A DNA stretch of 45,930 nt from Octopus bimaculoides (GCF_001194135.2 NC_068983.1:118016616-118062545); one strand, 5' to 3'. Positions 7,285-44,960 are shown, counted from the stretch's first letter. Notes: generated by a model from the sequence alone, not told the origin. A program made the numbers and translations.

Positions 7285-7575
7285 CTGGATAAGTAGAAAA
7301 GAGACAGCAAGAGATTATATAGACATAAATAGACAGGAAAAGTTCTTGAGTGAACCCTCAAATCAAATTCTACTGACTTAGGTAATACCGAACACGTTAC
7401 ACAATGCAACGCAGTCTTTAAAATAAAAACAAATGTGACTGTCACGGCTGGAAGACCTTTTAAATGGTAAAGATCTATTCGATCAGAACTGATTTGGGTA
7501 AAACAACAAAAGCATCAGCAACAATAAATAAAACGGTAAAATAGCACAAAATCAAAGGAATATAAATACAGAATT

Positions 7576-8019
7576 ATTGATTTTAAATTTTGGTACAAGG
7601 CCAGAAATGTAGGGGTAGGTGATAAGACGATTACATCGACCCAGTTCTCGACTGGTATTTATTTTATCGACCTCGAAAAGATGAAGTCGACCCCAACGGT
7701 GTTTGAACTCGAAACGTGAAAACGGACGGAAGGAAATGCTGAGAAACATTTTGCCCGGCGTGCTAACGCTTCTGCCATCTCGCCACCATTTAATACAGAA
7801 TTTTTTTTTCTACTCTAGGCACAAGGGCCAAAGTTTTTGGGAAGGAGGCCAGTCGATTAGATGAACCCCAGTACGCAACTGGTACTTAACTTATCGTCCA
7901 CAAAAGGATGAAAGGTAAAGTCGACCTCGGCGGAATTTGAACTCCGAACGTAAAGACAAACGAAATACCGCTTAGCATATCGCCCGGCGTGCTAACGTTT
8001 CTGCCAGCTCACCGCCTTT
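7576..8019 (-). mobile_element. Two SINE-E copies head-to-tail (7576-7790, 7803-8019), with different 3' subtypes
   Basis: Each copy has GGCGGCGAGCTGGCAGAA..GAGTTCAAATTCCGCCGAGGTCGACTTT-type sequence on the minus strand. An AATACAGAATT-like motif sits at all three junctions. Confidence 0.93.
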
Positions 8020-8944
8020 AAATGTAGGATTATTAACAAATAGCTTTGATTAAAAATTCTGTTTCTAAATATAGACTCTTAAGAGATGACAATATGTAAC
8101 TACCGAGAATAACTTTTTTGTATAGATGTTGTGAAGACAAAAACTGTCAGTCTAATGGAAGTCTTCGATTTAATAATGTAACTCTGGGCTTCTCTTTTTA
8201 TACTCACAAACATCTTCAGTAAAAGCAGATAAACCAAAATATGTTCACAATATGACATAGACGTTTACATGAGCAAAATAGACACTTTAATTGACAGAAG
8301 AATGTTTTCTATGACAAGTGACTGATATATATATATATATATACACACACTTTGCAAACTGTTCAACAATGGTCTTTTTATATTGCCTTGGGTATGTCTA
8401 TATGTATGAACCAGCAAGACAGTTCTCAGTGTGATAGCACTACCTACAATAAATATCATCTGAATCACTTATTGTCTTCTGTATGAAGATGTGCATGTAT
8501 AAGCCATTGAAAGAATATCTATACATAACTACATACGTATGACACCCCAGTGCTTGAGCCAAACAGCTAAATGTGCTAGAAATAACAGTTAATTATTTCT
8601 CAAACCACACTGTCTTGTGTATGAATATGTGTGTGCAAGAGAGAGAGAGAGAGAGAGGGGAGGAGGATGGTGGTGGGAGAAACAGACTGACAGACAGACA
8701 ACCAGACAGACAGATAGACATCCAGAGAAAATCAGCAGAGATGCGTTTATAATGTATCTCGACCTCTTAGAAATAACTGCCTAATCCTCTCAAACAACAG
8801 TCTTATGTATATTCACATGCATGATTGAACTAACCGTTGTAATTTCTTCATAGCAGATACACATTGTTGGAAAAACATCTATATCTTCCAGAAAGCACCT
8901 CAAACTATTTTATGTATGTTCACTGTGAAATCACTGTCTTCTAT

Positions 8945-8981
8945 GTTGTGTGTGTGTGTGTGTATGTGCGTGTTTGAGAAG

Positions 8982-9062
<81 letters not shown>
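8945..9062. repeat. (GT)n/(GA)n microsatellite
   Basis: Seen directly. Confidence 0.97.
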
Positions 9063-9068
<6 letters not shown>

Positions 9069-9407
9069 AACCAATATGGAAGCTTTCAAACAGTATCACA
9101 AAATGGCTGAAATAACGACCAGATTTCCCCAAAGCACATCTTATGTGTGTTTATGCAGCACCCAACAGGATAGACAAGTCATATATAATAGCTAATTATC
9201 CCTCAGATTACATTCTTTTCTCTCCTGTTACTTTAATACAATAGCTGGACATGGACATACCCCAGACATAACCAAGAACCTCTGATGATGCTAGTTAAGT
9301 TTAAAGCAGAACACATTGTAAATTTTAGTAATGTGACGCGTATATGTTTTCCCACATCGCCATATGGCAACACATCTATAGAGGAGGCTTTAATTGAAAT
9401 AAAATCA

Positions 9408-9778
9408 ATGTGATTGTATGGTAAGAAGCTTGCTTCCCAACCATAGGGCTCCAGGTTCAGTCCCACTGCGTGGTACCTTAAGCAGGTGTCTTCTACTAGA
9501 GCCTCTGACCGACCAAAGCATTGTGAGTGGATTTGGTAGATGCAGATTGAAAGAAGTCCGTCGTATATAAACATTTGTGTGTGTGTGTCCGTCACCACCG
9601 CTTGACAACCGGGGTGTTTACGTCCCCGTTCCTTAGTAGTTCAGTGAAAGAAATCAATAGAATAAGTAGCAGGTTTTAAAAAAAGCACCGAGGTTGGTCC
9701 ATTCTACTAAAAGATTTTTTCAAGGTGGTGCTCCAGCATGGCTGTAGTCTAATGACTGAAACAAGTAAAAGTAAAAGA
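9408..9778 (+). mobile_element. SINE-B, full length
   Basis: Same head, CORE-like motif and tail as the copy at 6102. Confidence 0.92.
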
Positions 9779-10533
9779 AACTAACTTACCACAATAAATT
9801 CACGTTGCTCCAGGAAGGACGAAGAACAAAGAATTATTCTTGGTGGGATTTGAACTCTGAACCTATAAAGGGACAAAATTTAATGCTGTTATAGTTATAT
9901 CCGTTGCTCTAAATATATGTTTAAGAATTGTATGCAAATATATGTGCAATAAATATTCACTTGTATATGGAATATAAGAATTTTGTATCTAGCGACAGAG
10001 AAACTAATATATGAAAGAAACGTTGTAGTGGAATGGGTAATGTCCCAGAAGCATGAGTCTCGGATCTGACCTCAAGCTATTTTATTTACGTGTCTAATGT
10101 ATTTGGAAATGCGATGTTTACTTTGTTTAATCTCATTTCCATTATTTACGCATAGAGACCCTTTACTCTCGAAGTCCCAAATGAAATAAAAGTTTTAAAT
10201 ATATATTCATGAAATGAATGTACCGAAAATCGTTAAGTACAAAGGCAGCCTCCAGCAATCCAATTTTTTTTTTTTTTTTTTTTTTTTGCTAATAGAAGCT
10301 GTTTCCCTTCTACACATATATGGTCATAAAAAATTCACCAACGTTACCGAATCTCATCTCCTGAACTTATTTTCTCTGTCAGTTTGTTTGCTGAAATCTA
10401 ACTTCATAAAATAAAGACCTTTTTTCACACAATATTAATTCAACATGTCAGTAATGATATATTAAAACAGCAAAAATTTTGCCATTTCTGATCAACTCTT
10501 CTTCTACGCCTCAAAATCTATTTTCATTATAAT

Positions 10534-10573
<40 letters not shown>

Positions 10574-11108: not shown

Positions 11109-11162
<54 letters not shown>

Positions 11163-11339
11163 TGTGTGTGTGTATGTGTGTGTGTGAAAACATTGTGAGT
11201 ATAGTGTCTCTGCAATTAAACATGCTATCCATAGCAGTACACGAAACTAGTATTATTAAATGAAAAGATACCACTAAATATCAGAAAATGTCCGTGTAGT
11301 TTTGTTGCTGGTTTAGGTTTTAATATTTAACCATGCTTT

Positions 11340-11548
11340 AAGGAGGTGAGCTGATAAACTCGTTAGCTCACCCGGCAAAATGCTTACCGACATTTCGCCC
11401 GTCTTTACGTTGTCAGTTCAATTTCCAAGGTAGACTTTACCTTTCATCCTTATGTAGTCGATAAAATAAGTACCAGTTGAGCACTGGGATCGATCTAATC
11501 GACTTCTCCTTCCCCCGAAATCGCTGGCCTTGTGCCAAAACTTGAAAT
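11340..11548 (+). mobile_element. SINE-E
   Basis: GGAGGTGAGCTG..GTAGACTTTACCTTTCATCC..GCTGGCCTTGTGCCAAAACTTGAAA, flanked by AATATTTAAC(C/T)ATG. Confidence 0.9.
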
Positions 11549-11699
11549 CAATATTTAACTATGGTGACAGAGTTAGATCGTCATTTACTACAGATTATCT
11601 GAGAGGTAGAAAAACTATCTTGTTAACTACTAAGTTGTGATCTGACAGGACACTCTTAATTCTTAAACTTTGCTGCTGTGGTTGTCGCTATCGCCGTTC

Positions 11700-12660: not shown

Positions 12661-12766
12661 AATAGAAACAAAATAGTTTTACAGCAGACGGCTAACTGGT
12701 TCAAACATTTAAAACTCACACTAAAATAAAGACCCAGCCGCACACTCGCGAATGTTTACATGACTT

Positions 12767-20525: not shown

Positions 20526-20569
20526 AACGTAATTAGGTAGGTAGACAGGTGTGTAATTATGTTTATTAA

Positions 20570-21070
20570 AAGTCGACTTCGGCGGAATTTGAACGCAGAA
20601 CGTAAAGACGGGCGAAAAGCATTTTGTCTGTCACGCTAACGACTCTGCCAACTCGCCGCTTTAACAATCCTTTCTACTATAGGCACAAGGCCTGAAATTT
20701 GTGGGGAGGAGGTAAGTCGATCACATTGACCCTAGTACTTGACTGGTACTTAATTTATCAACCCCAAAAGGATGAAAGGCAAAGTCGACCTCGGTGGAAT
20801 TTGAACTCAGAACCTAAAGACGGATGAAATGCTGCAAAGCATTTTTCCAGCGTGCTAAAGATTTTGCCAGCTTATAGCCTTAATAATAATAATAATTCTT
20901 TCTATTATAGGCACAAGACCTGAAATTTGGTGGGAGGGGACTAGTCGATTACATCGACTCGAAAGGATGAACGGCAAAATCGACCTTGGCAGAATTTGAA
21001 CTCAAAACATCAAGCCCAACGAAATGCCATTAAATGTTTTTCCCAGCGTGCTAACGATTCCGTCATCTGG
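20570..21070 (-). mobile_element. Three SINE-E copies head-to-tail (20570-20662 partial, 20670-20875, 20897-21070)
   Basis: Repeated AAAGTCGAC(C/T)TCGG.GGAATTTGAAC core; (AAT)n spacer at 20882-20895. Confidence 0.92.
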
Positions 21071-21974
21071 CCATAAAGTTTTGTAACCATTGGTTACGTG
21101 TTTTACTGAGGCAGGCTACTAAAAAAAAAAAGGAAAACGAGAGGAAAGTGTTTGAGGTGGTGGTAAATGGTACGTACAGCTTGAAGAGCTGTTATTTTGA
21201 CGTCTCAATTTATCGCATCACTATAAACTGTCATGATATTATACAGAATAGGCATTTGAACGTATCAAAAAGTATTTTTACACTTAATTAACATAAGTGG
21301 TGTCGCAGACACGAATATCTATCCGACATCGGGAAAAAATAAATTTGACGAAAACCAAATATCGAGTACATAATGCTTTTTGTTTTCATCAATTTTTATT
21401 CAGTTAACCTAAACACTTTTATAAGAGACTGTTTTAGCTCTCATTTCATAATAGATAATAGATCATGACGTTAATGAAGTGTATCGATCCTGGTTTTATT
21501 TTATTTTATTTCATTTTCTATTTTTGTTGTTTTGTTCAGTAAGTTAGTAATTTTGGTAGATATTCTTAGTGATCATTTGTGCAGAAACTAATCCAAAGTA
21601 GCGGAAACTTTAACCATTACAATTACTATATTAGTTTCTAGATCGGTAGACTTTACAGAAAATTGTTTAGTTGAGTCAGATTGTTTGGTTGAGTCAGGAG
21701 GAATGGGATGTGCCTGTATCTTACGCAGGCCCTCTGAGACCAGCTAAATCGACCAAGTTAATGTTCCTCTTCAACAGTTGCAAGTCGGCAAAATTCTTTG
21801 CAGTGTTTATTCGCCCCTGTTTTTAGCTTTTTTTTTCATTCAGTTAAGTTTGCCATTACCCAACAATATTTAACATAAACAAGAAACTACTTAAATTATC
21901 ACTATTATTGTTACAAATTTTATTAAGAACTTATTAATTTTACTATTATTATTCCATATACGCACAACAGAGAA

Positions 21975-22290
21975 AAAAATTCTTAACTTTCTCGTCATTT
22001 GGGACTGTAAAGTCAATTACCTGGCACTTTCTATTCTCTTCGTCTACAACTGCTAAATCATACCTCATAGCTTCTGTTACTCTGTCAGTCTGAATTGTAA
22101 AATTCCACATCTTATATTTCTTCCTTTCTAACACTTTACGAGGTTTATGTTCATACCGCTATCAGTATTGTCAACCCCTAGCTTTTCTACGTAACTCCCG
22201 GCGTATTATTTTTTCCTAGGACGTCATGCCCTTTCTTGTATTCTTTCTGTGCTAGTACACAACGTTCGCTAACTATATGAGTAACACTAT
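21975..22290 (-). mobile_element. R4/Dong-like non-LTR retrotransposon C-terminus (CCHC remnant plus PD-(D/E)xK restriction-like endonuclease)
   Basis: SVTHIVSERCVLAQKEYKKGHDVLG/KII..ELRRK..RYEHKPRKVLE..KMWNFTIQTDRVTEAMRYDLAVVD..KCQVIDFTVPNDEKV. This matches the HIVSEC..LAQ.EY..RH, WYEH.P..V.E, WDF.IQTD, RPD and IID..VP blocks of R4-clade RLE elements. Confidence 0.88.
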
Positions 22291-22300
22291 TACTATTATG

Positions 22301-22333
<33 letters not shown>

Positions 22334-22492
22334 AATAATAATAATAATAATTTTACGTTCTGGTTTCAAATTCCGCCGAGATCGACTTTGCGTTTCACCC
22401 TTTCGGGATCGATAAATTAAGTACCAGTGAAACACTGGGTCGGTGTAATCGACTAGTCCCCCCACCACCACCACCACCAAATTCCAGGAAGG

Positions 22493-22542
<50 letters not shown>

Positions 22543-22555
22543 CATCATTATTATT
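22291..22555 (+). mobile_element. 5'-truncated SINE-E (22352-22492) embedded in (ATT)n/(AAT)n microsatellite
   Basis: SINE-E body ending GAAGG followed by (ATT)n, preceded by (ATT)n(AAT)n. Confidence 0.92.
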
Positions 22556-22724
22556 GAGAGAGCAGCGCACGACATCAAAGTGACATTAGGGTACAAATAT
22601 ACAAAGCCATATATATATATATATATATATATATACCCGCCTGATAAGAGTACACCAGGTACATGCATCACAACCATATGTGCGTGATATGGTGAACTCA
22701 TATCAAGTACTGCATCAAGGAAAC

Positions 22725-23591
22725 GCCGAGAAAAATGCTTAGTGGTATTTCGTCCGTCTTTATGTTCTGAGTTCAAATTCCGTCGAGGTCCACTTTCCTT
22801 ATCATGCTTTCGATGTCGATAAAATAAGTACTAGTCGGACACTGGGGGTCGATGTAATCGACTGCCTCCTCCCACAAAATTTCAGGCCTTGCGCCTATTG
22901 TAGAAAGGATAATTATTGTTATATTAGGCAGCGAGTATTAAGCAGGTACACTGGACAAAATGCTTGGCGGCATTTCCTCCACCCTTATTTTCTGAGTTCA
23001 AATCCCGCCGCAGTCGACTTTGCCTTTCATCATTGCGAAGTCAATAAAATAAGTACCAGCTGAGGAGTACTGGGGTCGATATGATCGACTTCCCCAGTCC
23101 CCCAAAATTTCAGGTCTTTTGCCTATAGCAGAAAGGAGTATTAAAGGCAGCGAGCCGGCAGAATCGTTGGCACGCCGGACAAAATCTTAACGGTATTTGG
23201 TCCGTCTTTTCGTTCAGCGTTCAAATTCCGCCGAGGTCGACTTTGCCTTTCATTCTTTCGGGGTTGATAAAATAATTACCAATTGTATACTGGGGTAGGT
23301 GTAATCGACTTACCTCTTCACTTCGAACTTTCTGACCTTCTGCCAAACTTTTAAATCAATTTTCTATTCGTTAAGGCGGCGTGCTGGCTGGACCGTTACG
23401 TTAGCACGCCGGGTAAAATGCTTAGCAGTATTTCGTGTGTGTTTAAGTTTTGAGTTCAAATTCCGCTGAGGCTGATTTTCCCCTTCATTCTTTCTGGGTC
23501 GATAAAATAGGTATCAGTTGAATACTGGGGTCGACATTATCGACTTATCCCACCACTAAAGTTGCTGACCTTGTGCCAAAATTTGAAACCA
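22725..23591 (+). mobile_element. Four SINE-E copies head-to-tail (22725-22910, 22927-23137, 23146-23358, 23377-23591)
   Basis: Each copy has B-box GTTCAAATTCC/ATCCC and GTCGACTTTGCCTTTCAT..GTCGATAAAAT. Spacers are short and AT/ATT-rich, and the copies are mutually diverged. Confidence 0.94.
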
Positions 23592-24185
23592 TAATTATTT
23601 TTTTTTATTATCTTTCTTAATCATGGTTTGGCAAATGCATCAAGAGTTTCTTTTCCAAAAACCAGGATTGGGTACATAATAGATTAAGATGATGCATGAA
23701 AAAGCACTAGCAATTCTTATGGGATCCTAGTATTGTTATTTTCTGGAATGTGCCTATGTTTATCATTATAAATAAGCTGTCAATGTTCTTATAAAAATAG
23801 CTGTGTATCATAATAATTGTGCTAGTAACATATGGGATGATAATACACATTCCTTATCTGCTAGAATTTTTTTTTCTTAGTATTCAACAGCTTGTTTCCG
23901 TCTTACTTTGTTGCCTTTAAGTTCGTTTCTATACAGCCTCATTGTCATTTGGTACTGCAGTGTCGATAATTAGTACGCTGTTGTTTTTGTGATGACAAAT
24001 TGTGGTGTTAGACTTATGAGTTGTTTTATGTTTTGGAAAGTATCCCTAGCTATTTCACATTATCGTTTTCTAACATATGTGGAGATTCAAATGAGTACTA
24101 CAGAGTTGTTTTTTTCTTTTTGTTAAAACAGCTGAAAATGTGTGACTGGGTGTATGTAGAGTAGCTTTGCTATGGCGTACCCTTG

Positions 24186-24395
24186 AAGCGGTGAGCTGGG
24201 AAAATCGTTAGCACGCTGGACAAAATGTTTAGTGGCATTTCGCTGTCTTTACGTTCAGAGTCCAAATTCCGCCGAGGTCGACTTTGCCTTTCATCCCTTT
24301 CGGGGTCGATAAAATAAGTACCAGTTGAGCACTAGAGTCCATGTAATTGATTTACCACTCCACTGAAATTGCTGGCTCAGTGCCAAAATTTGAAA
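24186..24395 (+). mobile_element. SINE-E
   Basis: GCGGTGAGCTGGGAAAATCGTTAGCACGCTGG..GTGCCAAAATTTGAAA. Confidence 0.93.
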
Positions 24396-25834
24396 TTATC
24401 TGAAATAAAATCAATATATTGCGTAGTCAGTTCACTGTAAAGGTCCGTTTTTTTATGGTTGCTCCCTACGGTTGACCTATATGCCATCAGTTTATCCTTT
24501 GTGGGGACGGGGAGATGTTCGAATTAATTATTGAGCGTTTTGTGAGATAGTTTTTTTCTGTAGATATAGTCGATTTATTTCATCTTCTACAATCATAGTC
24601 AATAAGGGCACGTAGCAGACTCTCTTGTAAATTGCAAAGATAAATACAAAATTAATAACTGCATTCATATATTGCTCTCCTGCCATCTTCCTATCTAGGG
24701 TAGTTGGATATCAAATATTTTGTAAACAGCGTAGTGATTTTAGTAGATCTCTCATATTACAGTCTATGGAATCTAAGTTTATCACATTAAAGTCCAACAT
24801 TAGAGAGCTATATCTTTGACTCTGCAAATGTGTTAATGATACAGGGTGTTCTTGCCATTGAGATGAATTTTGTTTAAATATGCTTGATTGTGTTAAAACA
24901 TTCATTCTTAATCTTTAATCAAAGTTTTCATTTACTATTCCATTTTCAGTCGTGTCCAAGTACTTGTAAAACGTGGAATTTGTCCATCCTTGTATTATCT
25001 CACCTCTCGGGAGATTCAAATCAATGGTTTGGTTTATCTGTCACGACGCATCACGACCTTCTGTCATCTCTTCCGCCCAAAAGTATTAAGGAAAACATTT
25101 CTATAAAACTAAGTGACGATATTGAAAAACCTCTCAAACTGGGGACTATTTGTGGCATGCAATTTTAAGTTGTCCATAACAATGATTTGGTGGTTGAACC
25201 TGTTTTCCCTCCCCCATACACACACACACCTCTCTCTCTCTCTAATATCTCAAATTGGCATTTTTGTTTATTAGCTTTAAGGTAATAAGCATACAATGGA
25301 ATAAAGAGAACTACTATCCCCTCGAAATGTCTTACAGATATTCATGTGTCATGAGTTATGGAATCAAAGGTACATAGCAGGTTCTTTTTGCGTAATTCCG
25401 CATCATCCAATAACATATCTTTTACCATGGAGTTGATCAATTCTCTCGCTGGATTACGTTTACAACCTTTCTGCTCTACAGGAATTAATTATACAAATAG
25501 CGAAGAAAGCCATGTCTTAAATTAGTAGGCGCCGTCATCTGATCGATGACTTGCAAGTCTGGCTTTGGATAAACAGACCCTACTGGAGATGTTTCAAACA
25601 TTTTCAAGCAGAAAAATGTCTGGGATTAAAATCAAGTCCTATTTACAGTGCTCGTTTCAAGGTGGAGTGTTCAATTTTTCCGTGTTTCAAATGCTTTAAA
25701 ACCATCGTAGATCACTGCTTTCCAAACCGATCGTTTCCTGTCGTCTGCATTTCAGTCTTTAACATCTACAATAAGAACCTTAAGCTTGTTTTTGACGGCA
25801 TCCCTAGAACGTTTCTTAGGTTTATGTCACGAAG

Positions 25835-27400: not shown

Positions 27401-29529
27401 NNNNNNNNNNNNNNNNNNNNNNNNNNNNNNNNNNNNNNNNNNNNNNNNNNNNNNNNNNNNNNNNNNNNNNNNNNNNNNNNNNNNNNNNNNNNNNNNNNNN
27501 NNNNNNNNNNNNNNNNNNNNNNNNNNNNNNNNNNNNNNNNNNNNNNNNNNNNNNNNNNNNNNNNNNNNNNNNNNNNNNNNNNNNNNNNNNNNNNNNNNNN
27601 NNNNNNNNNNNNNNNNNNNNNNNNNNNNNNNNNNNNNNNNNNNNNNNNNNNNNNNNNNNNNNNNNNNNNNNNNNNNNNNNNNNNNNNNNNNNNNNNNNNN
27701 NNNNNNNNNNNNNNNNNNNNNNNNNNNNNNNNNNNNNNNNNNNNNNNNNNNNNNNNNNNNNNNNNNNNNNNNNNNNNNNNNNNNNNNNNNNNNNNNNNNN
27801 NNNNNNNNNNNNNNNNNNNNNNNNNNNNNNNNNNNNNNNNNNNNNNNNNNNNNNNNNNNNNNNNNNNNNNNNNNNNNNNNNNNNNNNNNNNNNNNNNNNN
27901 NNNNNNNNNNNNNNNNNNNNNNNNNNNNNNNNNNNNNNNNNNNNNNNNNNNNNNNNNNNNNNNNNNNNNNNNNNNNNNNNNNNNNNNNNNNNNNNNNNNN
28001 NNNNTATATATATATATATATATATCATATTTGACTATCCTACTAGATATTTTGGTGGGGAGCAGTATATAAGCAAATAAGTTTTGGGCTGGTAGTTAGA
28101 TGAGTCATATATTAGTCTTTTCTTGAGATTCATATTTGTTCTCCCAGAAGAGATCCATCTAAGTACTTGGTCGATTATTTAGGCTGGTGTTAAAGAAGAT
28201 CATTATCTAATAGTGTTGTATGTTACATTATGACAACCACCAAAAGTTATGGATGTTGTCAAAGGCGGGATTTTTTATACGTGGCTTCGTTTTCAAAACT
28301 GTGTTTCCAAAATGTGCCTATTTTTATATATTTTTATAAGTAACAGCTTACTGTCCTAAAATTGTGGGTTGTTTTGAAGGGCAAGGTTGTGAGAGAAACA
28401 TTTCCTGTAATGCAAGAATTATTGTAGTCTTATTTAACTAGATATCTTTGAAACAGGCGAGACTTTGCAGTTATTGATTATGTTCTCTCAATCGTCATCC
28501 GTTCTCCAAATAACATCGTACAACGTTTAAACTCTTTCTCTTGTGTTGTGTTTTTCTTTGTACTGTCGAATCTTGAGAAGACAAACTGCTATCCTTAGAG
28601 CAGCGTACTTCTGATTATGTGAACATGTATTCTGGTGAGAAAACCGATCTAATAAAATATTTATTAGTTTATTTTGATGAAACTTTTCTACGTCTAATAA
28701 TCCGTCTATTAAAAGTCGAAGAGGTGAACCATGAATACGTCTAACTGGCCAGAGAGTTCCTTATTAATATTAGCACCTTTATAATCCATGTTTTGAGAAC
28801 TGCATCAAGAGTTTTCTTTCTTCCAGTAGTTATTGCTGTGGTCGCTACTACTGCTGTAGCTGCTGTTGTTGGCCGCCACCATAGAGTAAGAGATGAGATT
28901 TCAGCTAATCCTAATTCACCGCTTGTTTTCAGCTTATGGCTGGCACCAATTCGCTTCGTTTACGTTACTGATGCTTTAAAAAATTTCCAAAGCAAAGAAA
29001 GTTCTGAACACAATTTCATTGTTTTCCATCCGACAAATTATAAACGCAGGTCTATTTAATTGGTGCCTTTGCATAATACATCAAAAGCTGCGCATTACAA
29101 AATAAATTATTGGGTAAAGTTAGTAGATCTAATTGCAAGAACCGAAAACGTATGATGGCGAAGAAAATTCTAAACTTTTCAGTGATTGCTGAACTAAACA
29201 GCTTAACGCCTTTCATAATGTTTATTGCATCACCATTGACAACGATCGACAATTCTATTTATAGGCTAGTTACTTGAGCATATTTAGAATTGAAGCATGG
29301 TCTGTGTGCAAATTAACTTGAATTACGCTGAAATAGATGGAGTGTTCTTTAGACGGTTGCGGGAAATGTCCGCTAGCCTTTGTGTAGCATGTGAAACATA
29401 TAAGCGAGTTGAGACGTATTGACACCGCTTGAAAATAACGTGTTCATGGAGTATAGACAGGATAAAATGTTATCCTTCTTCAAGCTCTGATCGTAAGAGC
29501 ACTTTAATTAAATATCTTTTAATTAATCC

Positions 29530-29935
29530 TTTCTATTACAGACACAGGGGCTGAAATTTGGTGGGAAGGTGTAAGTCGATCACATAGACCTCAATACATG
29601 ACAGGTACTTATTTCATCGACCCTAAAAGGATGAAAGGCAGTTGATCGCAGTGGAATTTGAACTCAGAACGTAAAGACGGACAAAATGCTGCTAAACATT
29701 TTGCACAGTGTGCTAACGACTTTTTCCTGCTCTAGGCACAAGGCCCGAAATTTTTGGGAAGGTGGTCAGTCGATTAGATCGACCCCAGTACACAACTGAT
29801 ACTTAATTTATCGACCCCGAAAGGATGAAAGGCAAAGTCGACCTCGGCGGAATTTGAACTCAGAACGTAAAGATAGATGAAATACCGGTAAGCATTTTCG
29901 CCCAGCGTGTTAACGACTCTGCCAACTCGCCCCCG
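29530..29935 (-). mobile_element. Two SINE-E copies head-to-tail
   Basis: Two AAAGGATGAAAGGCA..GGAATTTGAACTCAGAACGTAAAGA cores. Confidence 0.93.
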
Positions 29936-33165: not shown

Positions 33166-33389
33166 CCAAATAGTTGCATCTATGCCACAGATTTGCATGT
33201 AGAACTGACCAGAATAACTCAATATGAAAGTATCACGAAATGGTACCACTTCCTCAATATAAACGGTAGGATTATTTTATGACTGGTGTCAATTTTGATA
33301 GTCCGAAGTTCTGAGCATCAATCCTTCCATGACTTGAAACAGGCAACAGTGACACTCTCTAAAGTGTGCCTTTGTTGAAATCATAAATT

Positions 33390-33588
33390 GGTTTCAAATT
33401 TTGGCACAATGCCAGCAGTTTTGGAGGTGGGGTAAGTAGATTACATCGACTACTCCAGAGATAAACAGGTACTTATTTTTATCGGCCCTGAAAGCATGAA
33501 AGGTAAAGTCGACCTCAGCGGAAATCAAACTCAGACGGAATTGCGCTAAACATTTCTGTCCGGCGTGCTAACGATTCTGCCAACTCGC
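33390..33588 (-). mobile_element. SINE-E
   Basis: TTTCAAATTTTGGCACAA..AAAGTCGACCTCAGCGG..CTAACGATTCTGCCAACTCG. Confidence 0.9.
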
Positions 33589-34116: not shown

Positions 34117-34201
<85 letters not shown>

Positions 34202-34359: not shown

Positions 34360-35458
34360 TATTAATGAGTTTTTGTCCAAGAACGTTTTTTTCACCAATT
34401 ATTTGATATCCCCAATTGTTGCAGTGATGACATGTATCTCCTCGTGATCCCTCTACACACCCAAATAGATTAACTTAATTCAGATTTAAATGTAATTAAT
34501 GGGAACATACGCCCTGCCAATTGTAACTTGTTTCCTGAGTCAGTCAATATGCCTCACTTTAACCTAATTTAACTAAGTGCTCATAAATTATTGTATGGTC
34601 GGCTCACTAGTGAAGATTAGGTGTTTGTATATGTGTGGGAGTTCGTCAAGGATGCACTTCAGAGAGTTTCACTCTTGTCTACATCAAACCATAAAAGCTT
34701 GTATGCTCAGTACTGCAGACTAACAAATCAATAATGCAATAAACGTACTGCTTATAGCGATGAGGCATACCTTTGGTAGTACATTGTCTGGTACACAATG
34801 CAGCATAATTGGTAGGATACGAGTCATGCAACCTTCAAACGAAAAGAGAAATCTTTTCGTTAAAGCCTTAGTGTAATACAGCTTTAGGATTGTTCAGCCC
34901 ACGCCTTTCAGCTGCTTTCTTATTTAAAACTAACTGGTATTTTCTACTTTGTAAATACATTATAAATATGTGCTAAAACTACATCACTTCTCACGAAATA
35001 ACGCAATAGTAAGGAAAAGTATCAACTATTATCAGCTGTCACAATTCTGTTTCCTTTAACTGCTTATATTCAAATTTGATGTTTTATTTTCTCCTTAAGG
35101 GCAATCTCTGCCACCTGTCCTCCGTTGTAGACATACTTTCTCTGTCACCTCACGAATACCGTTATAATTTAAGATAAATCTCCGCCTTATTTAATCCACC
35201 TGTTTTGTTTTTGATGTTATCGTTGTTTTATGCAGTGAATTAGAGCTGCTTTTGTGTCTCCTATTTAGAAGAGGCAACAAATAAGAGGTCAATGAGGTGA
35301 AAGCTTTTCTTTTTTTTCCTAACTGGAACACGGTTATCTACCAGCTATTGAGATTTTAATTCATTTTCAGAAATCTGTTGCATGAATTTATTTATTTATA
35401 CCCGCGATTGAGACATGGAAAACATTATTATTATTATTATTATTGTCATCATTGTTAA

Positions 35459-35642
35459 GGCGGTGAGCTGGCAGAATCGTTACCACGCCGAGCGAAATGC
35501 TTAGCGGTACGTCGTCTGTCTCCACGTTCTAAGTTCAAATTCCACCGAGATTAACTTAGCCAAGCACCAATGAAATACTGGGTCGATGTAATCGGCTAGT
35601 CTTCTTCTCCAAAATAGCTGCCCTTGTGGCAAAATTTGAAAC
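35459..35642 (+). mobile_element. SINE-E flanked on both sides by (ATT)n
   Basis: GGCGGTGAGCTGGCAGAATCGTT..GCAAAATTTGAAAC; (ATT)n near 35424-35443 and 35644-35660. Confidence 0.93.
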
Positions 35643-36003
35643 AATTATTATTATTATTATCATCGCTATAGCTGGGGGTGTATTTTTGGAGCACTGTAAG
35701 TTTATGACTAATTCACTTGTTTACAAGGATCTATACTGTATTTTGTTTTTTATTATTGTTTAAATCTTTTTGCAAGCCAGCTGTCCGTCTGGGGAAGGAG
35801 GGGATGACCTTTATTAACCATAGCTTACTGTCTAAAATAAAAGATACAAACTTTTTTGTTTTCAAATTTCTTAGAAACTTTTCTTCGAAAAAGGTAAACA
35901 TTGAAGATGGTGATTAAAAACGGGGGTGGGGAAAGAGGGTGGTACGGCAATTTGCACGAGGACTTCCCCGTCTTCCTCGCCATGATTGGCAGTAGACAGC
36001 AGG

Positions 36004-36104: not shown

Positions 36105-36109
36105 GATTA

Positions 36110-37350: not shown

Positions 37351-38362
37351 CGTCACTAATTTTCATTATATAAAAGTTGTAGCCGCATTAAACTGCCTAC
37401 TTTTGACGATTGAAAGGAAGACATGGTTTGGCATAGCCAAAAGCCTGCTCCTCTATTCTGTGGCACTCAGTGATCAGCAAAAGCATAAAGACATTTATTG
37501 ATTTGTTTCTTTGAAATACAACCCATTTCTGAAAGTGTGAATAGGTACACCACCGACTGATATTTTTTTTATTGATCTTATCGTATTTATTTAACTGATT
37601 AGAGAAATGATCGATAGGAGACAAAATCGACCCAACCAGGAAAAACATATAAGCTATCGAAATAGAGTCTAGGAAGGATATTTTCCGCCTTTTTATGTTG
37701 TTCTTTTTCATTTACTCTTTCACTTTAATAATGATTTCTTACATGGCTACCTTTATAGATAGAGGAAATATAGAAATAGAAAATGCTGCGTGTATGTGTG
37801 TGTGAGAGAGAGAGTTGAATGTTTTTGATCTGAATTTGAATCTCAATCTTTATTCAGTTGATCGATCTAAATTCAATTGGTCGAGAAATAACAGTTATGT
37901 TCTTGTACATCATTCGTAAACAACGTGCATAGCAAAGGTAGGAGCCTCTACTTTAAAAATAGTAGTCAAATCAAACCTTCCTTATACCATAGCTTACTGT
38001 CTAAAATAAAAGATACAACAAAGTCCCGAAATGCAAAAACAAGAGAGGGATTGTCATGGTTGGAATATCATTGATAAGTCCGCTCCATCAAGGCTGATCT
38101 ATGGATAAACAACAAAGAACGCAGTCCATCTAGAAACTAATCGTAAGAATCATGCATATGTGATTTGTGCAATGTAAATATCGATTTCTTATACTAGCAT
38201 CGGTTTTCTTTTGGGGTATAATTGATTGAGTCGCCATTAATAAATGCCAGAAGCTTATTTTATGAACATTGGAGAGATGAGAGTCAAAGATGGCCTCAGC
38301 AGAACATGCACTCAAAGCACAGAGACGAAACTAACGTATGTGATTCTTTAATACTGGTTTCG

Positions 38363-38700
38363 AATTTTGGCACAAGGCCAGCAAGTTCAGTGGTGGGGGC
38401 TAAGTCGATTACATCGACTCCAGTGCTCAGCTGATAGGTATTCTATCGACCCCGAAATGATGAAAGGCACAGGCGACCTCGATGGAATTTGAACTCAGAA
38501 TGTACAGCGGACAAAATGGCGCTAAGCATTTTGCTCAGCATGCTAACGATTCTGCTTGCTCGCTGTCTTATGTTAGTCTAGTATTATTCAGCCGACATTG
38601 TACAAGAGAAATGTAAACGACCCAATTTGTGGAATTTGAGCTCAGAACAGAAAGGACCACGAGTAAATACCACAAAGCATGTTATACTATAGATTCAGTC
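38363..38700 (-). mobile_element. SINE-E (38363-38568) plus a diverged partial copy (38600-38700)
   Basis: TTTCGAATTTTGGCACAAGGCCAGCA..GGAATTTGAACTCAGAA..CTAACGATTCTGC. Confidence 0.88.
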
Positions 38701-39098: not shown

Positions 39099-39136
<38 letters not shown>

Positions 39137-39169
39137 AGGGTCCGCCATAAGTAACTATATATCTTCTTT

Positions 39170-40612: not shown

Positions 40613-40799
40613 CGGCAAGCTGGTAGAGTTGTTGGCATTTCGTCCGTTTTTACGGCTCTACGTTCAAATTCCACCGAAGTTGACTATGCATTTCATCTCT
40701 TCGGAATCGATAGAGTAAGTACTAGCTGAACACTTGAGTTGATGCAATCGAGAAACACCCGCCCCCGACATTGCTGGCCTTGTGCCAAAATTTGAAATT
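40613..40799 (+). mobile_element. SINE-E inserted at the end of the L1 remnant
   Basis: GCGGCAAGCTGGTAGAG..GTTCAAATTCCACCGAAG..GCCTTGTGCCAAAATTTGAAA. Confidence 0.88.
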
Positions 40800-40809: not shown

Positions 40810-40872
<63 letters not shown>

Positions 40873-42273
40873 NNNNNNNNNNNNNNNNNNNNNNNNNNNN
40901 NNNNNNNNNNNNNNNNNNNNNNNNNNNNNNNNNNNNNNNNNNNNNNNNNNNNNNNNNNNNNNNNNNNNNNNNNNNNNNNNNNNNNNNNNNNNNNNNNNNN
41001 NNNNNNNNNNNNNNNNNNNNNNNNNNNNNNNNNNNNNNNNNNNNNNNNNNNNNNNNNNNNNNNNNNNNNNNNNNNNNNNNNNNNNNNNNNNNNNNNNNNN
41101 NNNNNNNNNNNNNNNNNNNNNNNNNNNNNNNNNNNNNNNNNNNNNNNNNNNNNNNNNNNNNNNNNNNNNNNNNNNNNNNNNNNNNNNNNNNNNNNNNNNN
41201 NNNNNNNNNNNNNNNNNNNNNNNNNNNNNNNNNNNNNNNNNNNNNNNNNNNNNNNNNNNNNNNNNNNNNNNNNNNNNNNNNNNNNNNNNNNNNNNNNNNN
41301 NNNNNNNNNNNNNNNNNNNNNNNNNNNNNNNNNNNNNNNNNNNNNNNNNNNNNNNNNNNNNNNNNNNNNNNNNNNNNNNNNNNNNNNNNNNNNNNNNNNN
41401 NNNNNNNNNNNNNNNNNNNNNNNNNNNNNNNNNNNNNNNNNNNNNNNNNNNNNNNNNNNNNNNNNNNNNNNNNNNNNNNNNNNNNNNNNNNNNNNNNNNN
41501 NNNNNNNNNNNNNNNNNNNNNNNNNNNNNNNNNNNNNNNNNNNNNNNNNNNNNNNNNNNNNNNNNNNNNNNNNNNNNNNNNNNNNNNNNNNNNNNNNNNN
41601 NNNNNNNNNNNNNNNNNNNNNNNNNNNNNNNNNNNNNNNNNNNNNNNNNNNNNNNNNNNNNNNNNNNNNNNNNNNNNNNNNNNNNNNNNNNNNNNNNNNN
41701 NNNNNNNNNNNNNNNNNNNNNNNNNNNNNNNNNNNNNNNNNNNNNNNNNNNNNNNNNNNNNNNNNNNNNNNNNNNNNNNNNNNNNNNNNNNNNNATATAT
41801 ATATATACATATAATTTTATAGTCGATGTTCCAGTCACAATCCTTTACTTAACTGATTTCTAACTTCTCAATCTAATAAAATATATAGTATTGCATATAA
41901 TATTGTGATATGCTTTCTTCTCCGATAGTGAAACACCATCTATTGTTACGTTTTCATTTTCTTATACTCATATTTTCCGATTACACAATGTACGTTCATA
42001 TCTTTTGTTAACGCAGGAAAATCTATACATGTTGTATATATTCTCCAAATCTTTCTATGCACGAGTGCAATTCTGATTTGTGTAACTTTTTTGATTCGCA
42101 GTTTTATCTGCTCTTCTACTTCATTACGTAGTATTTTCTTGTAATCGATTACATTCTAAGATAGTTCATCTCCTATTGTTAGTCTTTCCCCATCCTTCTC
42201 TTCCTGACGACTCATTCTTCTGCAATAAACATAAAGTGCCGCATGTTATTTTCACGGCATTGTCATCTTTCTG

Positions 42274-42276
<3 letters not shown>

Positions 42277-42322
<46 letters not shown>

Positions 42323-42432
42323 ATTCTCTCTCTCTCTCTCTCACTCTCTCTCCCTCTCTCTCTTTCCGTCTACACACACACACACATGCACACACACATA
42401 CACAGCGAGAAAGAGAGAGAGAGAACGAGAGA
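42277..42432. repeat. (TC)n/(CA)n/(GA)n compound microsatellite
   Basis: Seen directly. Confidence 0.95.
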
Positions 42433-43581
42433 GAGGTATCTAATGTCTCATTTTTGAGGAATTTCATGCGTGTTAATTTGTTTTTAGTGCAACAGTTCTT
42501 TAAATACTGTTTCTTCTATTCTCTAGAAACAAACCAAAACTTATCTCCTCGAAGCATTCGATTCTCTCAAAGACACACTTATTCATGATCTAACTCGTAT
42601 GTCATTTTCACATTCTATTTGGTTTTCCCTTTTATTTCGCAAGCTCTCTTTGGGTACGATCAATAATTCACACTGCATCTCTTTTAAAAGGAACCGTTCT
42701 TTTCGTATTCAACAACATACTCTTCATTTTCATAATGTCACTTTTCGAAATAATTATTTCCTTTTCACCATCTAGTTTTGTTTTGTTTTCTGTTGTATGT
42801 GTGTGTTTTTTAATCCTTATCACCCTTCACCCTCACCACTAAATTTTTTTCATCCCTAAAAATCTCGTTTCATTTCAGAAGTAATCTTGTTTCTCGATTA
42901 TGTTTAGTAGAAAGTGTCATAACATTTCTTTTCTCTTTAATCCACATGTTTCTGAACTCTATTCCTAAATTTCTATTAAAAGCTGTCGTTTTCTCAATGG
43001 AAATCTATCCACGTAACTCTACAACATTATGATTTAAATTTAATTTAGTTTCACAGTAAATATCCATTTTTTAGTTTATTCTAAATTATTGAGAATAAAA
43101 TTTGAATTATAGGATTAGTATAAAATAAAAATATTATGAGAATTTCTCTCAGGAATCTAGAATATATTAGATTTGGGCTCATAATTGATTGCAAAATGAT
43201 GGGAAAGAAAGAGAAACTGTATATAACAAGATTATATGCGTTGTTCTATCTAGTCATTTCACATCTCTTCATGTTCTGTGGTCAAATCCAGCATGCGTTT
43301 ACTTGCCCTCCAGAGTCTATAAAAGTAGTTCACATGGAAATTTATACATCTCCCAAGTAATTTTTTTTTTTTTGCCTTGTACTAAAGTAAGAAATCGTTA
43401 TTATCATCCAAATAGTGTAACCGAAGAACGAGTCTTTAGAATCATTTTTTTTCCATATTCCTAGATATGTCTATTTAATCAAACCCCGCTCAACTACAAA
43501 AATTGTACATTTGCCGCGTCAAAAGTATCTAAAGCAGAAATGATAAACGCTGGACTATCTCTTTTACAATATTTAATGTAC

Positions 43582-43967
43582 CTTCGTCTGTCTTTACGTT
43601 TTGAGTTCAAATTCCGCCGAGATCAACTTTGCCTTTCATCATTTCGGGGTCGATAAATTAAGTACCAGTGGCGTACTGGAGTAGATCTAATCGACTGCCC
43701 CCCCTCCCAAAAAACTTCGGGCCTTGTACCTAGATTAGAAAAGAATATTTAATGTTCTTCTGGCGACGAGATGGCAGAATCGTTAGCACGCCGGTCAAAA
43801 TATTTATCGGCATTTCGTCCGTTCTGAGTTCTAATTTCTCCGAGGTCGACTTTACCTCTCATTCTTTCGGGCAAGAATGAGATTAAACGATAAAATAGGC
43901 ACCAGGGGTCAATCTAATTGATCTATCCATCTCCTGGAATTGCTGGCCTTGTGCCAAAACTTGAAAG
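43582..43967 (+). mobile_element. Two SINE-E copies head-to-tail (43582-43743, 43761-43967), with different 3' subtypes
   Basis: AAT(A/G)TTTAATGT at 43568-43579, 43744-43755 and 43969-43980. Confidence 0.94.
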
Positions 43968-44960
43968 CAATGTTTAATGTCCCTCATTATTCTAAGTTCA
44001 AATCTCGTTAGAATAAACGTCGCCTTCAGACATTTTGTGGTCGATAAGATAATAGAGCAACAGAGTCGCGTGAGTCTCTGACAAAATATATTGCAGTATT
44101 AAACCCTTAACAATCTTGCTAATGTTGACTTCGCTTTTCATCCTTGCTAGTTCTAAAAAAATGAAGTACTTGTCAAATACTGGAGGTGAAATAATTGACT
44201 GTTCCATCCCCATATGCCTATGTAAGAAATCAATATACGCTATGTTGATTCAGTTATTCACCCTTTATGGCAAACAGTTGCCTGTTTGCCCGGACATGAA
44301 TCTAATAGTCAGTTTTGGCTTAAGCAATATATTTTACTTGTGTCCGAAGATCGTTTTAAATTTCTAAAATGGTAATCAATGTTTTTTAAGTTAATTAATT
44401 TACACATATACTGTATACAGTTACAAAAAAATACGAACTTAGGAAAATAACATTTTCAGTAAATTGAAATTTGACTTTTAATAGGAGAAACCAGATTAAA
44501 GCTTGCGGCACCTGTCAGCGACTATCCAAAGATAGGAGAAAGTTTTTCAAGAAATTAAAAATGAATTTCAGTGATATTTTAAACAAATCTGATCTCAGTC
44601 CAGTTAGTTACTGAATTGCTTATCTGAATATCATTATCATCAAAGGGTTTCATCATTCAACAGAAATCAATGAATTTATTAGGTAGGGTTCTGATCGTTA
44701 TATCAAGCTAAAGAAAAAAAAAACGAACAGAGAACACAACTGACAAAATATCGAAGAACATGACACGATTAAAATACAAATATATTTCGTGTTTGAACAC
44801 ACAACTTTTGGATAAAATCTCTTGCAAAAAATGAAAAGAAGCAATAAATATATTCAAAACGACGAATGAAAGATGGTATGATAAACCCTTCTATTATATT
44901 TGCGTTTTTTGTGAGATCAAAAGTAACTACCTTCCGGGAGAAAGAAGTTGTTTCCTGTAT

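What the first reader, a model, noticed from the sequence alone, without database searches (positions are those of the whole stretch)
7564..43980. SINE-E repeatedly re-inserts at the same AAT/ATT-rich target, building head-to-tail arrays: a possible site-specific SINE system
About 20 copies occur, mostly in same-orientation arrays (x2 at 7.6 kb, x3 at 20.6 kb, x4-5 at 22.3-23.6 kb, x2 at 29.5 kb, x2 at 43.6 kb). In two dimers the same 11-12 bp motif sits at all three junctions: AAT(A/G)TTTAATGT at 43568/43744/43969, and an AATACAGAATT-like motif at 7565/7792/8021. The two members of these dimers carry different 3' subtypes (..GTGCCAAAATTTGAAACC versus ..GTGCCTA.AGTAGAAAGG), so they are not simple tandem duplicates. 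Most 3' flanks read AATATT/ATTATT, and single copies at 22352 and 35459 sit inside (ATT)n. R4/Dong-clade RLE retrotransposons are known to target TAA-type repeats, and such a fragment lies at 21975-22290, beside the largest array. My inference is that SINE-E may be mobilised by a microsatellite-targeting RLE LINE, an uncommon SINE-LINE partnership that would channel insertions into AAT repeats and into its own TSDs.
Basis: partly seen in the sequence, partly recalled or inferred. Interest (0 to 1): 0.72.

Follow-up and report, generated by a model that had tools for sequence, protein, structure and literature searches.

The report
SINE copies stacked head-to-tail at ATT sites
An old, very abundant short mobile element repeatedly landed beside earlier copies of itself, because its ATT-type tail matches the sites it integrates into; the pile-ups are real, but the proposed R4/Dong driver is not supported.

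Summary
The window has 20 clear copies of a ~215-bp SINE plus about 10 decayed ones. Thirteen clear copies lie in five same-orientation head-to-tail arrays: 8 adjacencies of 30 bp or less, against 0.14 expected by chance. Two dimers carry the same 12-15-bp motif at all three junctions, and their members are different 3' subtypes. Array neighbours are no more alike than random pairs (74.7% vs 74.5% identity), so tandem duplication is excluded.

The "AAT/ATT-rich flank" is mostly the element's own terminal hexamer (AATATT/ATTATT, sometimes expanded to (ATT)n). However, the readable target-site duplications also begin with that hexamer. The target therefore matched the tail before insertion, and two copies sit in pre-existing (ATT)n.

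My reading is tail-to-target annealing during target-primed reverse transcription. Each insertion regenerates the site, so later copies land at the same nick. Some junctions have no room for a duplication and fit reverse-transcriptase template jumps.

The R4/Dong partnership is not supported. The RLE-type fragment at 21975-22290 is real, but it is a decayed internal piece on the other strand. It reads the microsatellite as (TAA)n, as Bombyx Dong does, whereas the SINE reads (ATT)n. No LINE 3' end was available for comparison. Known analogues: Alu self-insertion hotspots and bivalve SINE arrays.

The parts
7576..7784 (-). SINE-E copy, X-type tail, full length; downstream member of dimer A1
   Evidence: nhmmer 180 bits, profile 2-213; tail column
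7802..8013 (-). SINE-E copy, Y2-type (A-rich end), full length; upstream member of dimer A1
   Evidence: nhmmer 210 bits; best relative is 29931m in another array
7564..7578 (-). Right copy of the triple target-site duplication of dimer A1 (AATAATTCTGTATTT in element orientation); the other two copies are at 7791-7805 and 8020-8034
   Evidence: sequence; flank comparison
11345..11553 (+). Single X-type copy with a 14-bp duplication, AATATTTAACCATG (11322-11335) / AATATTTAACTATG (11550-11563)
20569..21072 (-). Array A2 of three copies: 21072-20893 (Y1), 20873-20666 (Y1), 20657-20569 (cut at profile position 98). Junctions are AATT(ATT)4 and ATTGTT.
21975..22290 (-). Decayed internal fragment of an RLE-type LINE C-terminus (CCHC-like HIVSE.C.LAQKEYK..HD motif, then ..D..VVD......IDF). 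It has one frameshift and several stops and is flanked by ATT-type repeats on the + strand.
   Evidence: translation; 46% identity to P0001 over 93 aa, E = 8e-25 pairwise; the only PDB hits of P0001 are the RLE domain of R2 proteins 9nl3/9dou, E about 0.05
22288..22555 (+). (ATT)14-(AAT)7, then a 5'-truncated Y-type SINE copy (22352-22492), then (ATT)21
   Evidence: TRF; nhmmer 98 bits; sequence
22723..23593 (+). Array A3 of four copies: 22723-22911 (Y1, 5'-truncated), 22941-23140 (Y1), 23149-23360 (X), 23378-23593 (X). The last three are flanked as a block by ATAATTATTGTT / ATAATTATTTTT. Internal junctions are AGTATT (6 nt) and AATTTTCTATTCGTT.
24190..24398 (+). Single X-type copy with a weak duplication, TATGGCGTA / TATTGCGTA
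29525..29931 (-). Array A4: 29931-29721 (Y2, full length) joined with no spacer to 29725-29525 (Y1, 5'-truncated at profile position 11)
33387..33588 (-). Single X-type copy
35424..35660 (+). X-type copy (35462-35647) inside (ATT)n, with a 21-bp duplication ATTATTATTATTATTGTCATC / ATTATTATTATTATTATCATC. The leader ATTGTT lies between the duplication and the AAGGCGG head.
38218..38684 (-). X-type copy 38563-38352 between two old same-orientation SINE-like copies (38684-38627 and 38329-38218)
40616..40798 (+). X-type copy with an internal deletion, abutting the 3'-truncated L1/Tx1-like RT fragment; followed by (TA)n and a gap
43568..43980 (+). Dimer A5: duplication (43568-43579), Y2 copy 5'-truncated (43580-43743), duplication (43744-43755), leader TCTTCT plus X copy (43756-43968), duplication (43969-43980)
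43547..44233 (+). Older decayed copies that host or follow dimer A5. Copy O is 43547-43579 plus 43981-44052; once the dimer is removed in silico it aligns contiguously to profile 25-129. Copy P is 44116-44233.
   Evidence: joined-flank nhmmer 22.1 bits, against 17.2 for the right part alone

Best explanation
What SINE-E is. It is an old, high-copy SINE; copies are 78-89% identical to the consensus. It has a Pol III-type head, a conserved core and three 3' subtypes. The X and Y1 subtypes share a small GGCC-TTGTG-CC-type hairpin and end in a short triplet tail, AATATT or ATTATT, occasionally expanded to (ATT)n. (The Pol III inference rests on a B-box-like GAGTTCAAATTCC; it is not a detectable tRNA.)

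How it integrates (inferred). A LINE integrates it by target-primed reverse transcription. The nicked target strand has to anneal to the terminal AAUAUU/(AUU)n of the RNA. First nicks are therefore used at AATATT/ATTATT-like sites, and in (ATT)n only in one orientation. Shown in support: the duplication begins with the same hexamer as the tail.

Why arrays form (inferred). Every insertion leaves two copies of that site, one in each duplication, plus an ATT tail. The locus becomes a better target than before. Later copies of any subtype enter at the same nicks. This gives same-orientation head-to-tail arrays of unrelated copies, and dimers with the duplication at all three junctions.

Junctions of 0-6 nt, and the trimer flanked as a block by one duplication, are best explained by the reverse transcriptase jumping from the 5' end of one SINE RNA to the 3' end of another within one event. 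This is inferred.

The LINE partner is unknown. The strand used and the 11-21-bp duplications at non-repeat sites fit an APE-type LINE with a trinucleotide tail (RTE-like) better than a canonical (TAA)n-specific Dong. This is an inference from the literature.
For: - Real family and arrays: (8 adjacencies vs 0.14 expected; 8 of 8 in the same orientation).
- Independent origin of array members: neighbour identity 0.747 vs 0.745 for non-neighbours, Mann-Whitney p = 0.40; no copy has its best match in its own array.
- Duplications start with the tail hexamer: 11345, 35462, 43580, 43765, 7784m.
- ATT-phase triplets are enriched 3' of the core (5.5 vs 1.5 per 20 nt, p < 1e-4), but AAT-phase triplets are not.
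- Two copies lie inside (ATT)n in the ATT sense.
- Same-nick re-use: triple duplications in A1 and A5 with different subtypes. A5 is nested in an older copy, which fixes the empty-site sequence.
- Junction classes of 0/6 nt versus 15-18 nt, and the block duplication around 22941-23593.
- Control: two other repeat families in the same window (4 copies each) form no arrays.
- An unrelated 543-bp scaffold, L003, shows the same element with an ATTATTATTGTTGTTGTT leader and a second same-orientation fragment.
- Known precedent: about 19,000 sense-orientation Alu-into-Alu insertions at one hotspot, explained by L1 nicking plus tail annealing (PMC2836564). RTE 3' ends carry di- or tri-nucleotide repeats, including (ATT)n, with 6-12-bp duplications (PMC2887409).
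Against: - Only about 6 of 18 copies have a readable duplication; the rest are too decayed or sit inside arrays.
- AATATT occurs at chance frequency (0.9 per kb), and 34 unoccupied sites remain in the window. Hexamer matching alone predicts roughly 1.5-4 coincident insertions, not 9. Something more is needed: longer ATT tracts, template jumps or local chromatin.
- No LINE 3' end could be compared.
- The head is not recognised as a tRNA by ARAGORN or Rfam.
- The hairpin is not energetically exceptional (z = -1.3 and +0.2).
Confidence: 0.55

Rival explanations
1. SINE-E is mobilised by a microsatellite-specific RLE LINE of the R4/Dong clade, which channels it into TAA/AAT-type repeats and into its own duplications.
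For: - An RLE-type LINE fragment lies 60 bp from the microsatellite that holds copy 22352.
- Dong elements, including one from a snail, target (TAA)n (PMC3812793).
- Dong-R4 is the most abundant recently active LINE group reported in Octopus vulgaris (PMC13282606).
- Re-use of identical nick pairs suggests sequence-determined cleavage.
Against: - Opposite strand: the fragment and Bombyx Dong read (TAA)n in their sense, while SINE-E reads (ATT)n.
- Most copies are outside microsatellites and have 11-15-bp duplications of ordinary sequence.
- The fragment is internal and decayed, and shares nothing with the SINE tails.
- Its clade (R4/Dong vs HERO, NeSL or R2) was not established.
Confidence: 0.1
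2. Arrays are mainly made in single events. The reverse transcriptase copies one SINE RNA, jumps end-to-end to another, and integrates a ready-made concatemer. Target preference plays little part.
For: - Junctions of 0 and 6 nt leave no room for a duplication.
- The trimer 22941-23593 is flanked as a block by ATAATTATTKTT.
- Members are unrelated copies.
- The element begins with the same kind of triplet (ATTGTT/ATTATT) with which it ends, giving microhomology for a jump.
- Template switching is the accepted origin of composite SINEs (PMC3272025).
Against: The two best-preserved dimers have the full duplication at the internal junction, which a single event cannot produce. The model does not explain duplications that start with the tail hexamer, or copies inside (ATT)n.
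Confidence: 0.15
3. Arrays arose by tandem duplication or unequal crossing-over between duplications, as proposed for the bivalve TSD1-(SINE-TSD1)n arrays.
For: The layout duplication-SINE-duplication-SINE-duplication is the one described in Scapharca broughtonii (PMC11481361).
Against: Neighbours are no closer than random pairs. They belong to different subtypes and have different 5' truncations. No copy has its best match in its own array.
Confidence: 0.03
4. There is no special mechanism. An extremely dense SINE in an AT-rich, insertion-tolerant region gives chance pile-ups.
For: SINEs make up more than 10% of octopus genomes (PMC13282606). The window was chosen for looking unusual.
Against: Random placement never gives more than 3 adjacencies, against 8 observed. 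All adjacent pairs share orientation. The re-use of identical nicks and the duplication-tail identity are not expected by chance. Other repeat families in the window do not stack.
Confidence: 0.07

Closest known systems
Alu self-insertion hotspot (L1 nick plus poly(A)/poly(T) annealing; Levy, Schwartz & Ast 2010, PMC2836564)
   Same: A SINE lands inside or next to older copies of itself, in the sense orientation, at a site that pairs with its own tail. The duplication length depends on how much of the spacer is tail-like.
   Different: The tail here is AATATT/(ATT)n, not poly(A). The stacking is at the 3' tail and duplications rather than at an internal linker. The partner LINE is unknown.
Tandem-like SINE arrays in bivalves (TSD1-(SINE-TSD1)n and TSD1-(SINE)n-TSD1; PMC11481361)
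   Same: A mollusc, tRNA-type SINEs with microsatellite tails, and both array layouts, including arrays that mix families.
   Different: The bivalve arrays with internal duplications consist of near-identical units and are attributed to unequal recombination. Here the units are different subtypes and no closer than random pairs. In this window 65% of clear copies are in arrays, against about 3% genome-wide in the bivalve; note that this window was selected.
Dong / R4-clade (TAA)n-specific LINEs
   Same: Association with an AT-only trinucleotide microsatellite. An RLE-type LINE fragment lies in the same repeat.
   Different: Opposite strand of the repeat. Most SINE-E copies are not in microsatellites. 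No shared 3' end was shown.
RTE-dependent SINEs with trinucleotide-repeat tails (e.g. HaSE1/HaRTE1 with (TGA)n; PMC3272025, PMC2887409)
   Same: tRNA-type head, conserved body, short LINE-like 3' region ending in a few trinucleotide units, and variable 5-18-bp duplications.
   Different: RTE insertion is described as not sequence-specific. Identity of the SINE-E tail to an RTE 3' end is untested.

Membership tests
SINE (Pol III-type, non-autonomous retroposon) | Short, non-coding, many dispersed diverged copies | tested here: met
   About 215 bp; 20 strong copies at 78-89% identity to the consensus
SINE (Pol III-type, non-autonomous retroposon) | tRNA-derived head with A and B boxes | tested here: inconclusive
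   The B-box-like GAGTTCAAATTCC and the TGGCAGAATCG region are visible in the consensus. ARAGORN finds no tRNA, and Rfam finds none even at E <= 5.
SINE (Pol III-type, non-autonomous retroposon) | Variable target-site duplications and 5' truncations, the signature of target-primed reverse transcription | tested here: met
   Duplications of 11-21 bp for about 6 copies; 5'-truncated copies 22352, 22723, 29725m and 43580
SINE (Pol III-type, non-autonomous retroposon) | 3' end shared with a partner LINE | not testable with these tools
   No LINE with this tail in the window; no cephalopod LINE sequence could be fetched
Dong/R4-dependent, (TAA)n-specific element | Inserted in (TAA)n with (TAA)n in the element's sense strand | tested here: not met
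   SINE-E carries (ATT)n in its sense at tails and in both microsatellite-embedded copies. Dong carries (TAA)n (PMC3774820 primer).
Dong/R4-dependent, (TAA)n-specific element | Copies essentially confined to the microsatellite target | tested here: not met
   Only 2-3 of about 12 independent loci are in a triplet microsatellite
RLE-bearing LINE (the fragment at 21975-22290) | C-terminal CCHC motif followed by a PD-(D/E)xK-type restriction-like endonuclease | tested here: met
   46% identity over 93 aa to P0001. The only PDB matches of P0001 are R2 RLE domains, aligned on KPD..V...D...K..KY, at a weak E of about 0.05.
RLE-bearing LINE (the fragment at 21975-22290) | Placement in the R4/Dong clade by RT or RLE phylogeny | not tested
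   Only 3 homologues were retrieved and the fragment has no RT domain. Its (TAA)n-sense flanks agree with Dong but do not define the clade.
Tandem duplication / SINE-derived satellite | Neighbouring units are each other's closest relatives | tested here: not met
   0.747 vs 0.745, p = 0.40; every best match lies outside the copy's own array
RTE-dependent SINE | Short 3' region ending in a few di- or tri-nucleotide units; duplications of about 6-12 bp or more; no strict target | tested here: inconclusive
   The tail and duplication lengths fit (PMC2887409). The defining identity to an RTE 3' end could not be tested.

The most novel reading that the evidence does not exclude
SINE-E and its still unidentified LINE form a self-reinforcing landing-pad system. 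The triplet tail is both the recognition element and the target. Every insertion therefore seeds the next, builds arrays genome-wide, and spawns or extends (ATT)n microsatellites. The driver could be a microsatellite-directed LINE working on the ATT strand, either a Dong-like lineage with inverted strand choice or another clade. That would make this one of very few target-specific SINE-LINE pairs.
Probability: 0.15. Interest if true: 0.6.

Novelty: new member of a known kind. Interest (0 to 1): 0.35.

Why it matters
SINEs are reported to make up roughly a tenth of octopus genomes and have been linked to genome rearrangement there. Suppose their placement is steered by tail-to-target pairing, so that copies pile onto earlier copies. 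Then SINE density maps, age estimates from nested insertions, microsatellite origin and recombination-prone direct repeats in these genomes all need to be read with that bias in mind. It would also give a non-poly(A) counterpart to the Alu self-insertion hotspot. As it stands, this is one selected window and an expected consequence of known retrotransposition chemistry. It is not a new system.

Tried and rejected
Attempts to fetch the partner LINE or more SINE copies from elsewhere:
- A homologue search with the RLE fragment gave 3 hits, none cephalopod.
- A search with the L1/Tx1-like RT gave only contigs under 1.2 kb, plus two long contigs from another organism with no SINE-E.
- A search with a peptide translated from the antisense SINE consensus gave one 543-bp scaffold.
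- Exact-pattern scans of the metagenome, prokaryote-genome and viral collections with the 25-nt B-box segment gave 0 hits.

Other dead ends:
- A search for tail-only matches in the window, which would mark LINE 3' ends, found only SINE copies.
- The idea that the copy at 40616 is the true 3' end of the L1/Tx1-like fragment was rejected. The copy includes the SINE head, and the LINE reading frame stops short of its normal C-terminus.
- Tandem duplication was rejected.
- A composite "Y2+X dimer" element was rejected, because the linker differs between the two dimers and equals the local duplication.
- An extended target AATATTTAA, shared by two loci, was judged not significant once the tail hexamer is taken as given (one search counts plus reasoning).
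- tRNA identity of the head was not detected.
- Energetic support for the 3' hairpin was not significant.


Full report
**What is there**

The window is AT-rich eukaryotic DNA (62% A+T) with 8 runs of N. By its repeat content it looks cephalopod-like. That is my inference from the literature on octopus SINEs and LINEs; the species was not identified.

A profile built from window copies finds 20 clear copies of a ~215-bp element and about 10-15 weak or old ones. The element starts ..TTAAGGCGGCGAGCTGGCAGAATCGTTAGCACGCC. It has a B-box-like GAGTTCAAATTCC and a conserved core, GGGGTCGATAAAATAAGTACCAG...GGGGTCGATGTAATCGACTTA.

It ends in one of three 3' versions:
- X: ..GCTGGCCTTGTGCCAAAATTTGAAACC
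- Y1: ..TTTCAGGCCTTGTGCCTATAGTAGAAAGG
- Y2: ..GGGCCTTGTGCCTAGAGTAGAAAAA

After the core comes a hexamer, AATATT/ATTATT or a one-off variant. It is expanded to (ATT)4-21 in three copies.

Copies are 78-89% identical to the consensus, so all are old. ARAGORN and Rfam do not call the head a tRNA, even at E <= 5. "tRNA-derived" is therefore an inference from the box motifs.

**Gaps first, as asked**

No copy or junction touches a gap. The nearest distances are 75 and 231 bp for two single copies, and at least 777 bp for every array. All but one gap are flanked on at least one side by a dinucleotide repeat. One gap (40873-41794) is inside the finding's range but not in the program's list. The gap at 39825-40093 interrupts an L1/Tx1-like RT fragment, whose continuity cannot be judged. 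Array members differ from each other by 19-31%, so the arrays cannot be an assembly collapse.

Thirteen of the 20 clear copies lie in five head-to-tail arrays of 2, 3, 4, 2 and 2. There are 8 same-orientation adjacencies with a gap of 30 bp or less. Random placement gives a mean of 0.14 and a maximum of 3 in 20,000 trials. All 8 adjacent pairs share orientation.

Two other repeat families in the same window, with 4 copies each, are all solitary.

I add three observations:
- The 43.6-kb dimer sits inside an older decayed copy. When the dimer and two copies of the motif are removed in silico, the flanks align as one contiguous copy (profile 25-129, 22.1 bits vs 17.2 for the right part alone). 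This fixes the empty site as ..TTTTAC|AATATTTAATGT|CCCTC.
- The copy at 38352-38563 is bracketed by two old same-orientation copies.
- A 543-bp scaffold from an unrelated sample carries the same element with a second same-orientation fragment 65 bp away.

**Not tandem duplication**

Neighbour identity is 0.747, against 0.745 for the 180 non-neighbour pairs (Mann-Whitney p = 0.40). No copy has its best match in its own array. The three Y2 copies, each in a different array, are each other's closest relatives.

**Tail or target?**

The first 6 nt after the core are 95% A/T. ATT-phase triplets are enriched in the next 20 nt (5.5 vs 1.5, p < 1e-4), but AAT-phase triplets are not. Outside microsatellites the 5' flanks are not significantly AT-rich (p = 0.12). 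Most of the "AAT/ATT-rich flank" is therefore the element's own strand-specific tail.

The readable duplications nevertheless begin with the same hexamer:
- AATATTTAACCATG / AATATTTAACTATG (copy 11345)
- AATATTTAATGT, three times (43.6 kb)
- AATAATYCTRYATTT, three times (7.6 kb)
- (ATT)5GTCATC / (ATT)5ATCATC (copy 35462)
- weaker, TATGGCGTA / TATTGCGTA (copy 24190)

The 5' copy of a duplication cannot come from the tail, so the target matched the tail before insertion. Two copies lie in pre-existing (ATT)n in the ATT sense, and a third does tentatively.

This is what target-primed reverse transcription gives when the nicked strand must pair with the RNA's terminal AAUAUU/(AUU)n. It is the triplet-tail counterpart of the L1/Alu model, in which poly(T) at the nick pairs with the poly(A) tail. 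That model explains about 19,000 sense-orientation Alu-into-Alu insertions at one hotspot (PMC2836564).

**Why arrays**

Each insertion duplicates the matching site and adds a tail, so the locus offers two or three sites where there was one.

AATATT itself occurs at chance frequency: 39 per window, 34 of them unoccupied. With about 120 tail-like hexamers and 20 insertions, I estimate 1.5-4 coincidences. That is short of the 9 observed, so simple hexamer matching is not the whole story.

Junctions fall into two classes:
- 15-18 nt, which is tail plus duplication: serial re-insertion at the same two nicks.
- 0-6 nt, with no room for a duplication: ATTGTT, AGTATT, and one direct fusion to a 5'-truncated copy.

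The block 22941-23593 (Y1-X-X) is flanked as a unit by ATAATTATTGTT / ATAATTATTTTT.

The element also tends to begin with a tail-like hexamer just before AAGGCGG. This is ATTGTT in the solitary copy 35462, after its duplication, and ..ATTGTTGTTGTT in L003.

I therefore think some arrays, or parts of them, were made in one event by the reverse transcriptase jumping from the 5' end of one SINE RNA to the 3' end of another. That is inference. Such jumps are the accepted origin of composite SINEs.

**The LINE partner**

The fragment at 21975-22290 is a real remnant of an RLE-type LINE C-terminus. It shows 46% identity over 93 aa to a coral protein. That protein's only PDB matches are the restriction-like endonuclease domains of R2 proteins.

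But the fragment lies on the minus strand, has one frameshift and several stops, and lacks an RT domain and a recognisable 3' end. Its clade was not established. In its own sense it is flanked by (AAT)n = (TAA)n. That is the orientation of Bombyx Dong, whose sense-strand 5'-junction primer carries (TAA)7 (PMC3774820). SINE-E uses the other strand of the very same microsatellite.

Together with the 11-21-bp duplications at ordinary sites, this speaks against a canonical Dong mode of integration.

The literature shows two relevant facts:
- RTE elements end in short di- or tri-nucleotide repeats, including (ATT)n, and make 6-12-bp duplications (PMC2887409).
- Dong-R4, RTE, CR1 and L1-Tx1 are all recently active in Octopus vulgaris (PMC13282606).

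The decisive comparison of 3' ends could not be run. No LINE with this tail is in the window. None of the public collections I could reach holds cephalopod DNA in usable pieces.

**Comparison and verdict**

Tandem-like SINE arrays with both layouts seen here are already described in bivalves, where they are attributed to unequal recombination (PMC11481361). The arrays here differ in being built from unrelated copies.

Self-insertion hotspots driven by tail-target pairing are known for Alu. Microsatellite-specific LINEs are known, but the evidence here does not tie SINE-E to one.

I rate this as a real, well-documented local pattern that follows from known retrotransposition chemistry with an unusual tail: a new member of a known kind, with moderate-to-low interest. 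The selected single window and the missing partner test are the main limits.

Noticed in passing
window 3851-4034, 6000-6520, 9419-9665, 34194-34346; and 6870-7400, 12765-13135, 30827-31216, 45262-45444: Two other interspersed repeat families with 4 copies each (72-94% identity), all solitary. The first is often next to (TA)n/(TG)n. I used them only as a control for array formation.
   Followed up: partly
window 39099-40600 (+): A 5'- and 3'-truncated L1/Tx1-like LINE fragment (Pfam RVT_1, plus a zinc-knuckle-like C-terminal motif). It is preceded by (AAT)12, broken by the gap 39825-40093, and runs straight into SINE copy 40603-40798. A possible very decayed Y-type SINE fragment lies on the minus strand at about 39045-39095, just past the microsatellite.
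   Followed up: partly
window 17568-18155 (-): The translation looks like the N-terminal AP-endonuclease domain of a LINE (..WNICTLQDKSDINRPERHTALVCRELARFSIDAAALSE..). Pfam gave no hit. The element is cut off by (TA)n and the gap 17240-17378.
   Followed up: partly
window 44984-45175 (+): A short RT motif block (..DVIYFVFNKAFDRVGHNTLLQKL..) of a CR1/L2-like LINE; weak RVT_1 hit, E = 0.02.
   Followed up: partly
window 22640-22709: A near-perfect 70-nt hairpin between the (ATT)21 tract and array A3. It gives sub-threshold hits to the mir-3045 model on both strands (27 bits vs a gathering score of 90). It is probably just a palindrome or a MITE-like remnant.
   Followed up: no
window 22288-22351: The microsatellite switches polarity from (ATT)14 to (AAT)7 exactly at the 5' end of the truncated SINE copy 22352. 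I have no explanation.
   Followed up: no
window 7802-8013, 29721-29931, 43580-43743: All three Y2-type copies (A-rich end) are the upstream member of a dimer. With n = 3 this may be chance.
   Followed up: partly
window 40873-41794: A 922-N assembly gap inside the finding's range that the scan program's note does not list. It is flanked by (TA)n on both sides.
   Followed up: yes
window 35996-37055 (+): A (GAA)32 tract followed by a K/E/R-rich, open-reading-frame-like stretch of about 300 codons in two frames. It may be a LINE ORF1 remnant. No Pfam hit.
   Followed up: partly
L003 1-543: A metagenome scaffold (ENA ERZ23499442) holds a SINE-E copy with the leader ATTATTATTGTTGTTGTT, a second same-orientation Y2-type fragment, and a different tRNA-like SINE in the opposite orientation. 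The family therefore exists outside this window's assembly.
   Followed up: partly
window 2361-2614, 3262-3329, 4347-4448, 9807-9879, 14177-14286: Weak matches (12-31 bits) to the SINE-E core. These are older copies or related SINE families that share the B-box and core region. Two of them (2361-2444 and 2532-2614) are again same-orientation neighbours.
   Followed up: partly
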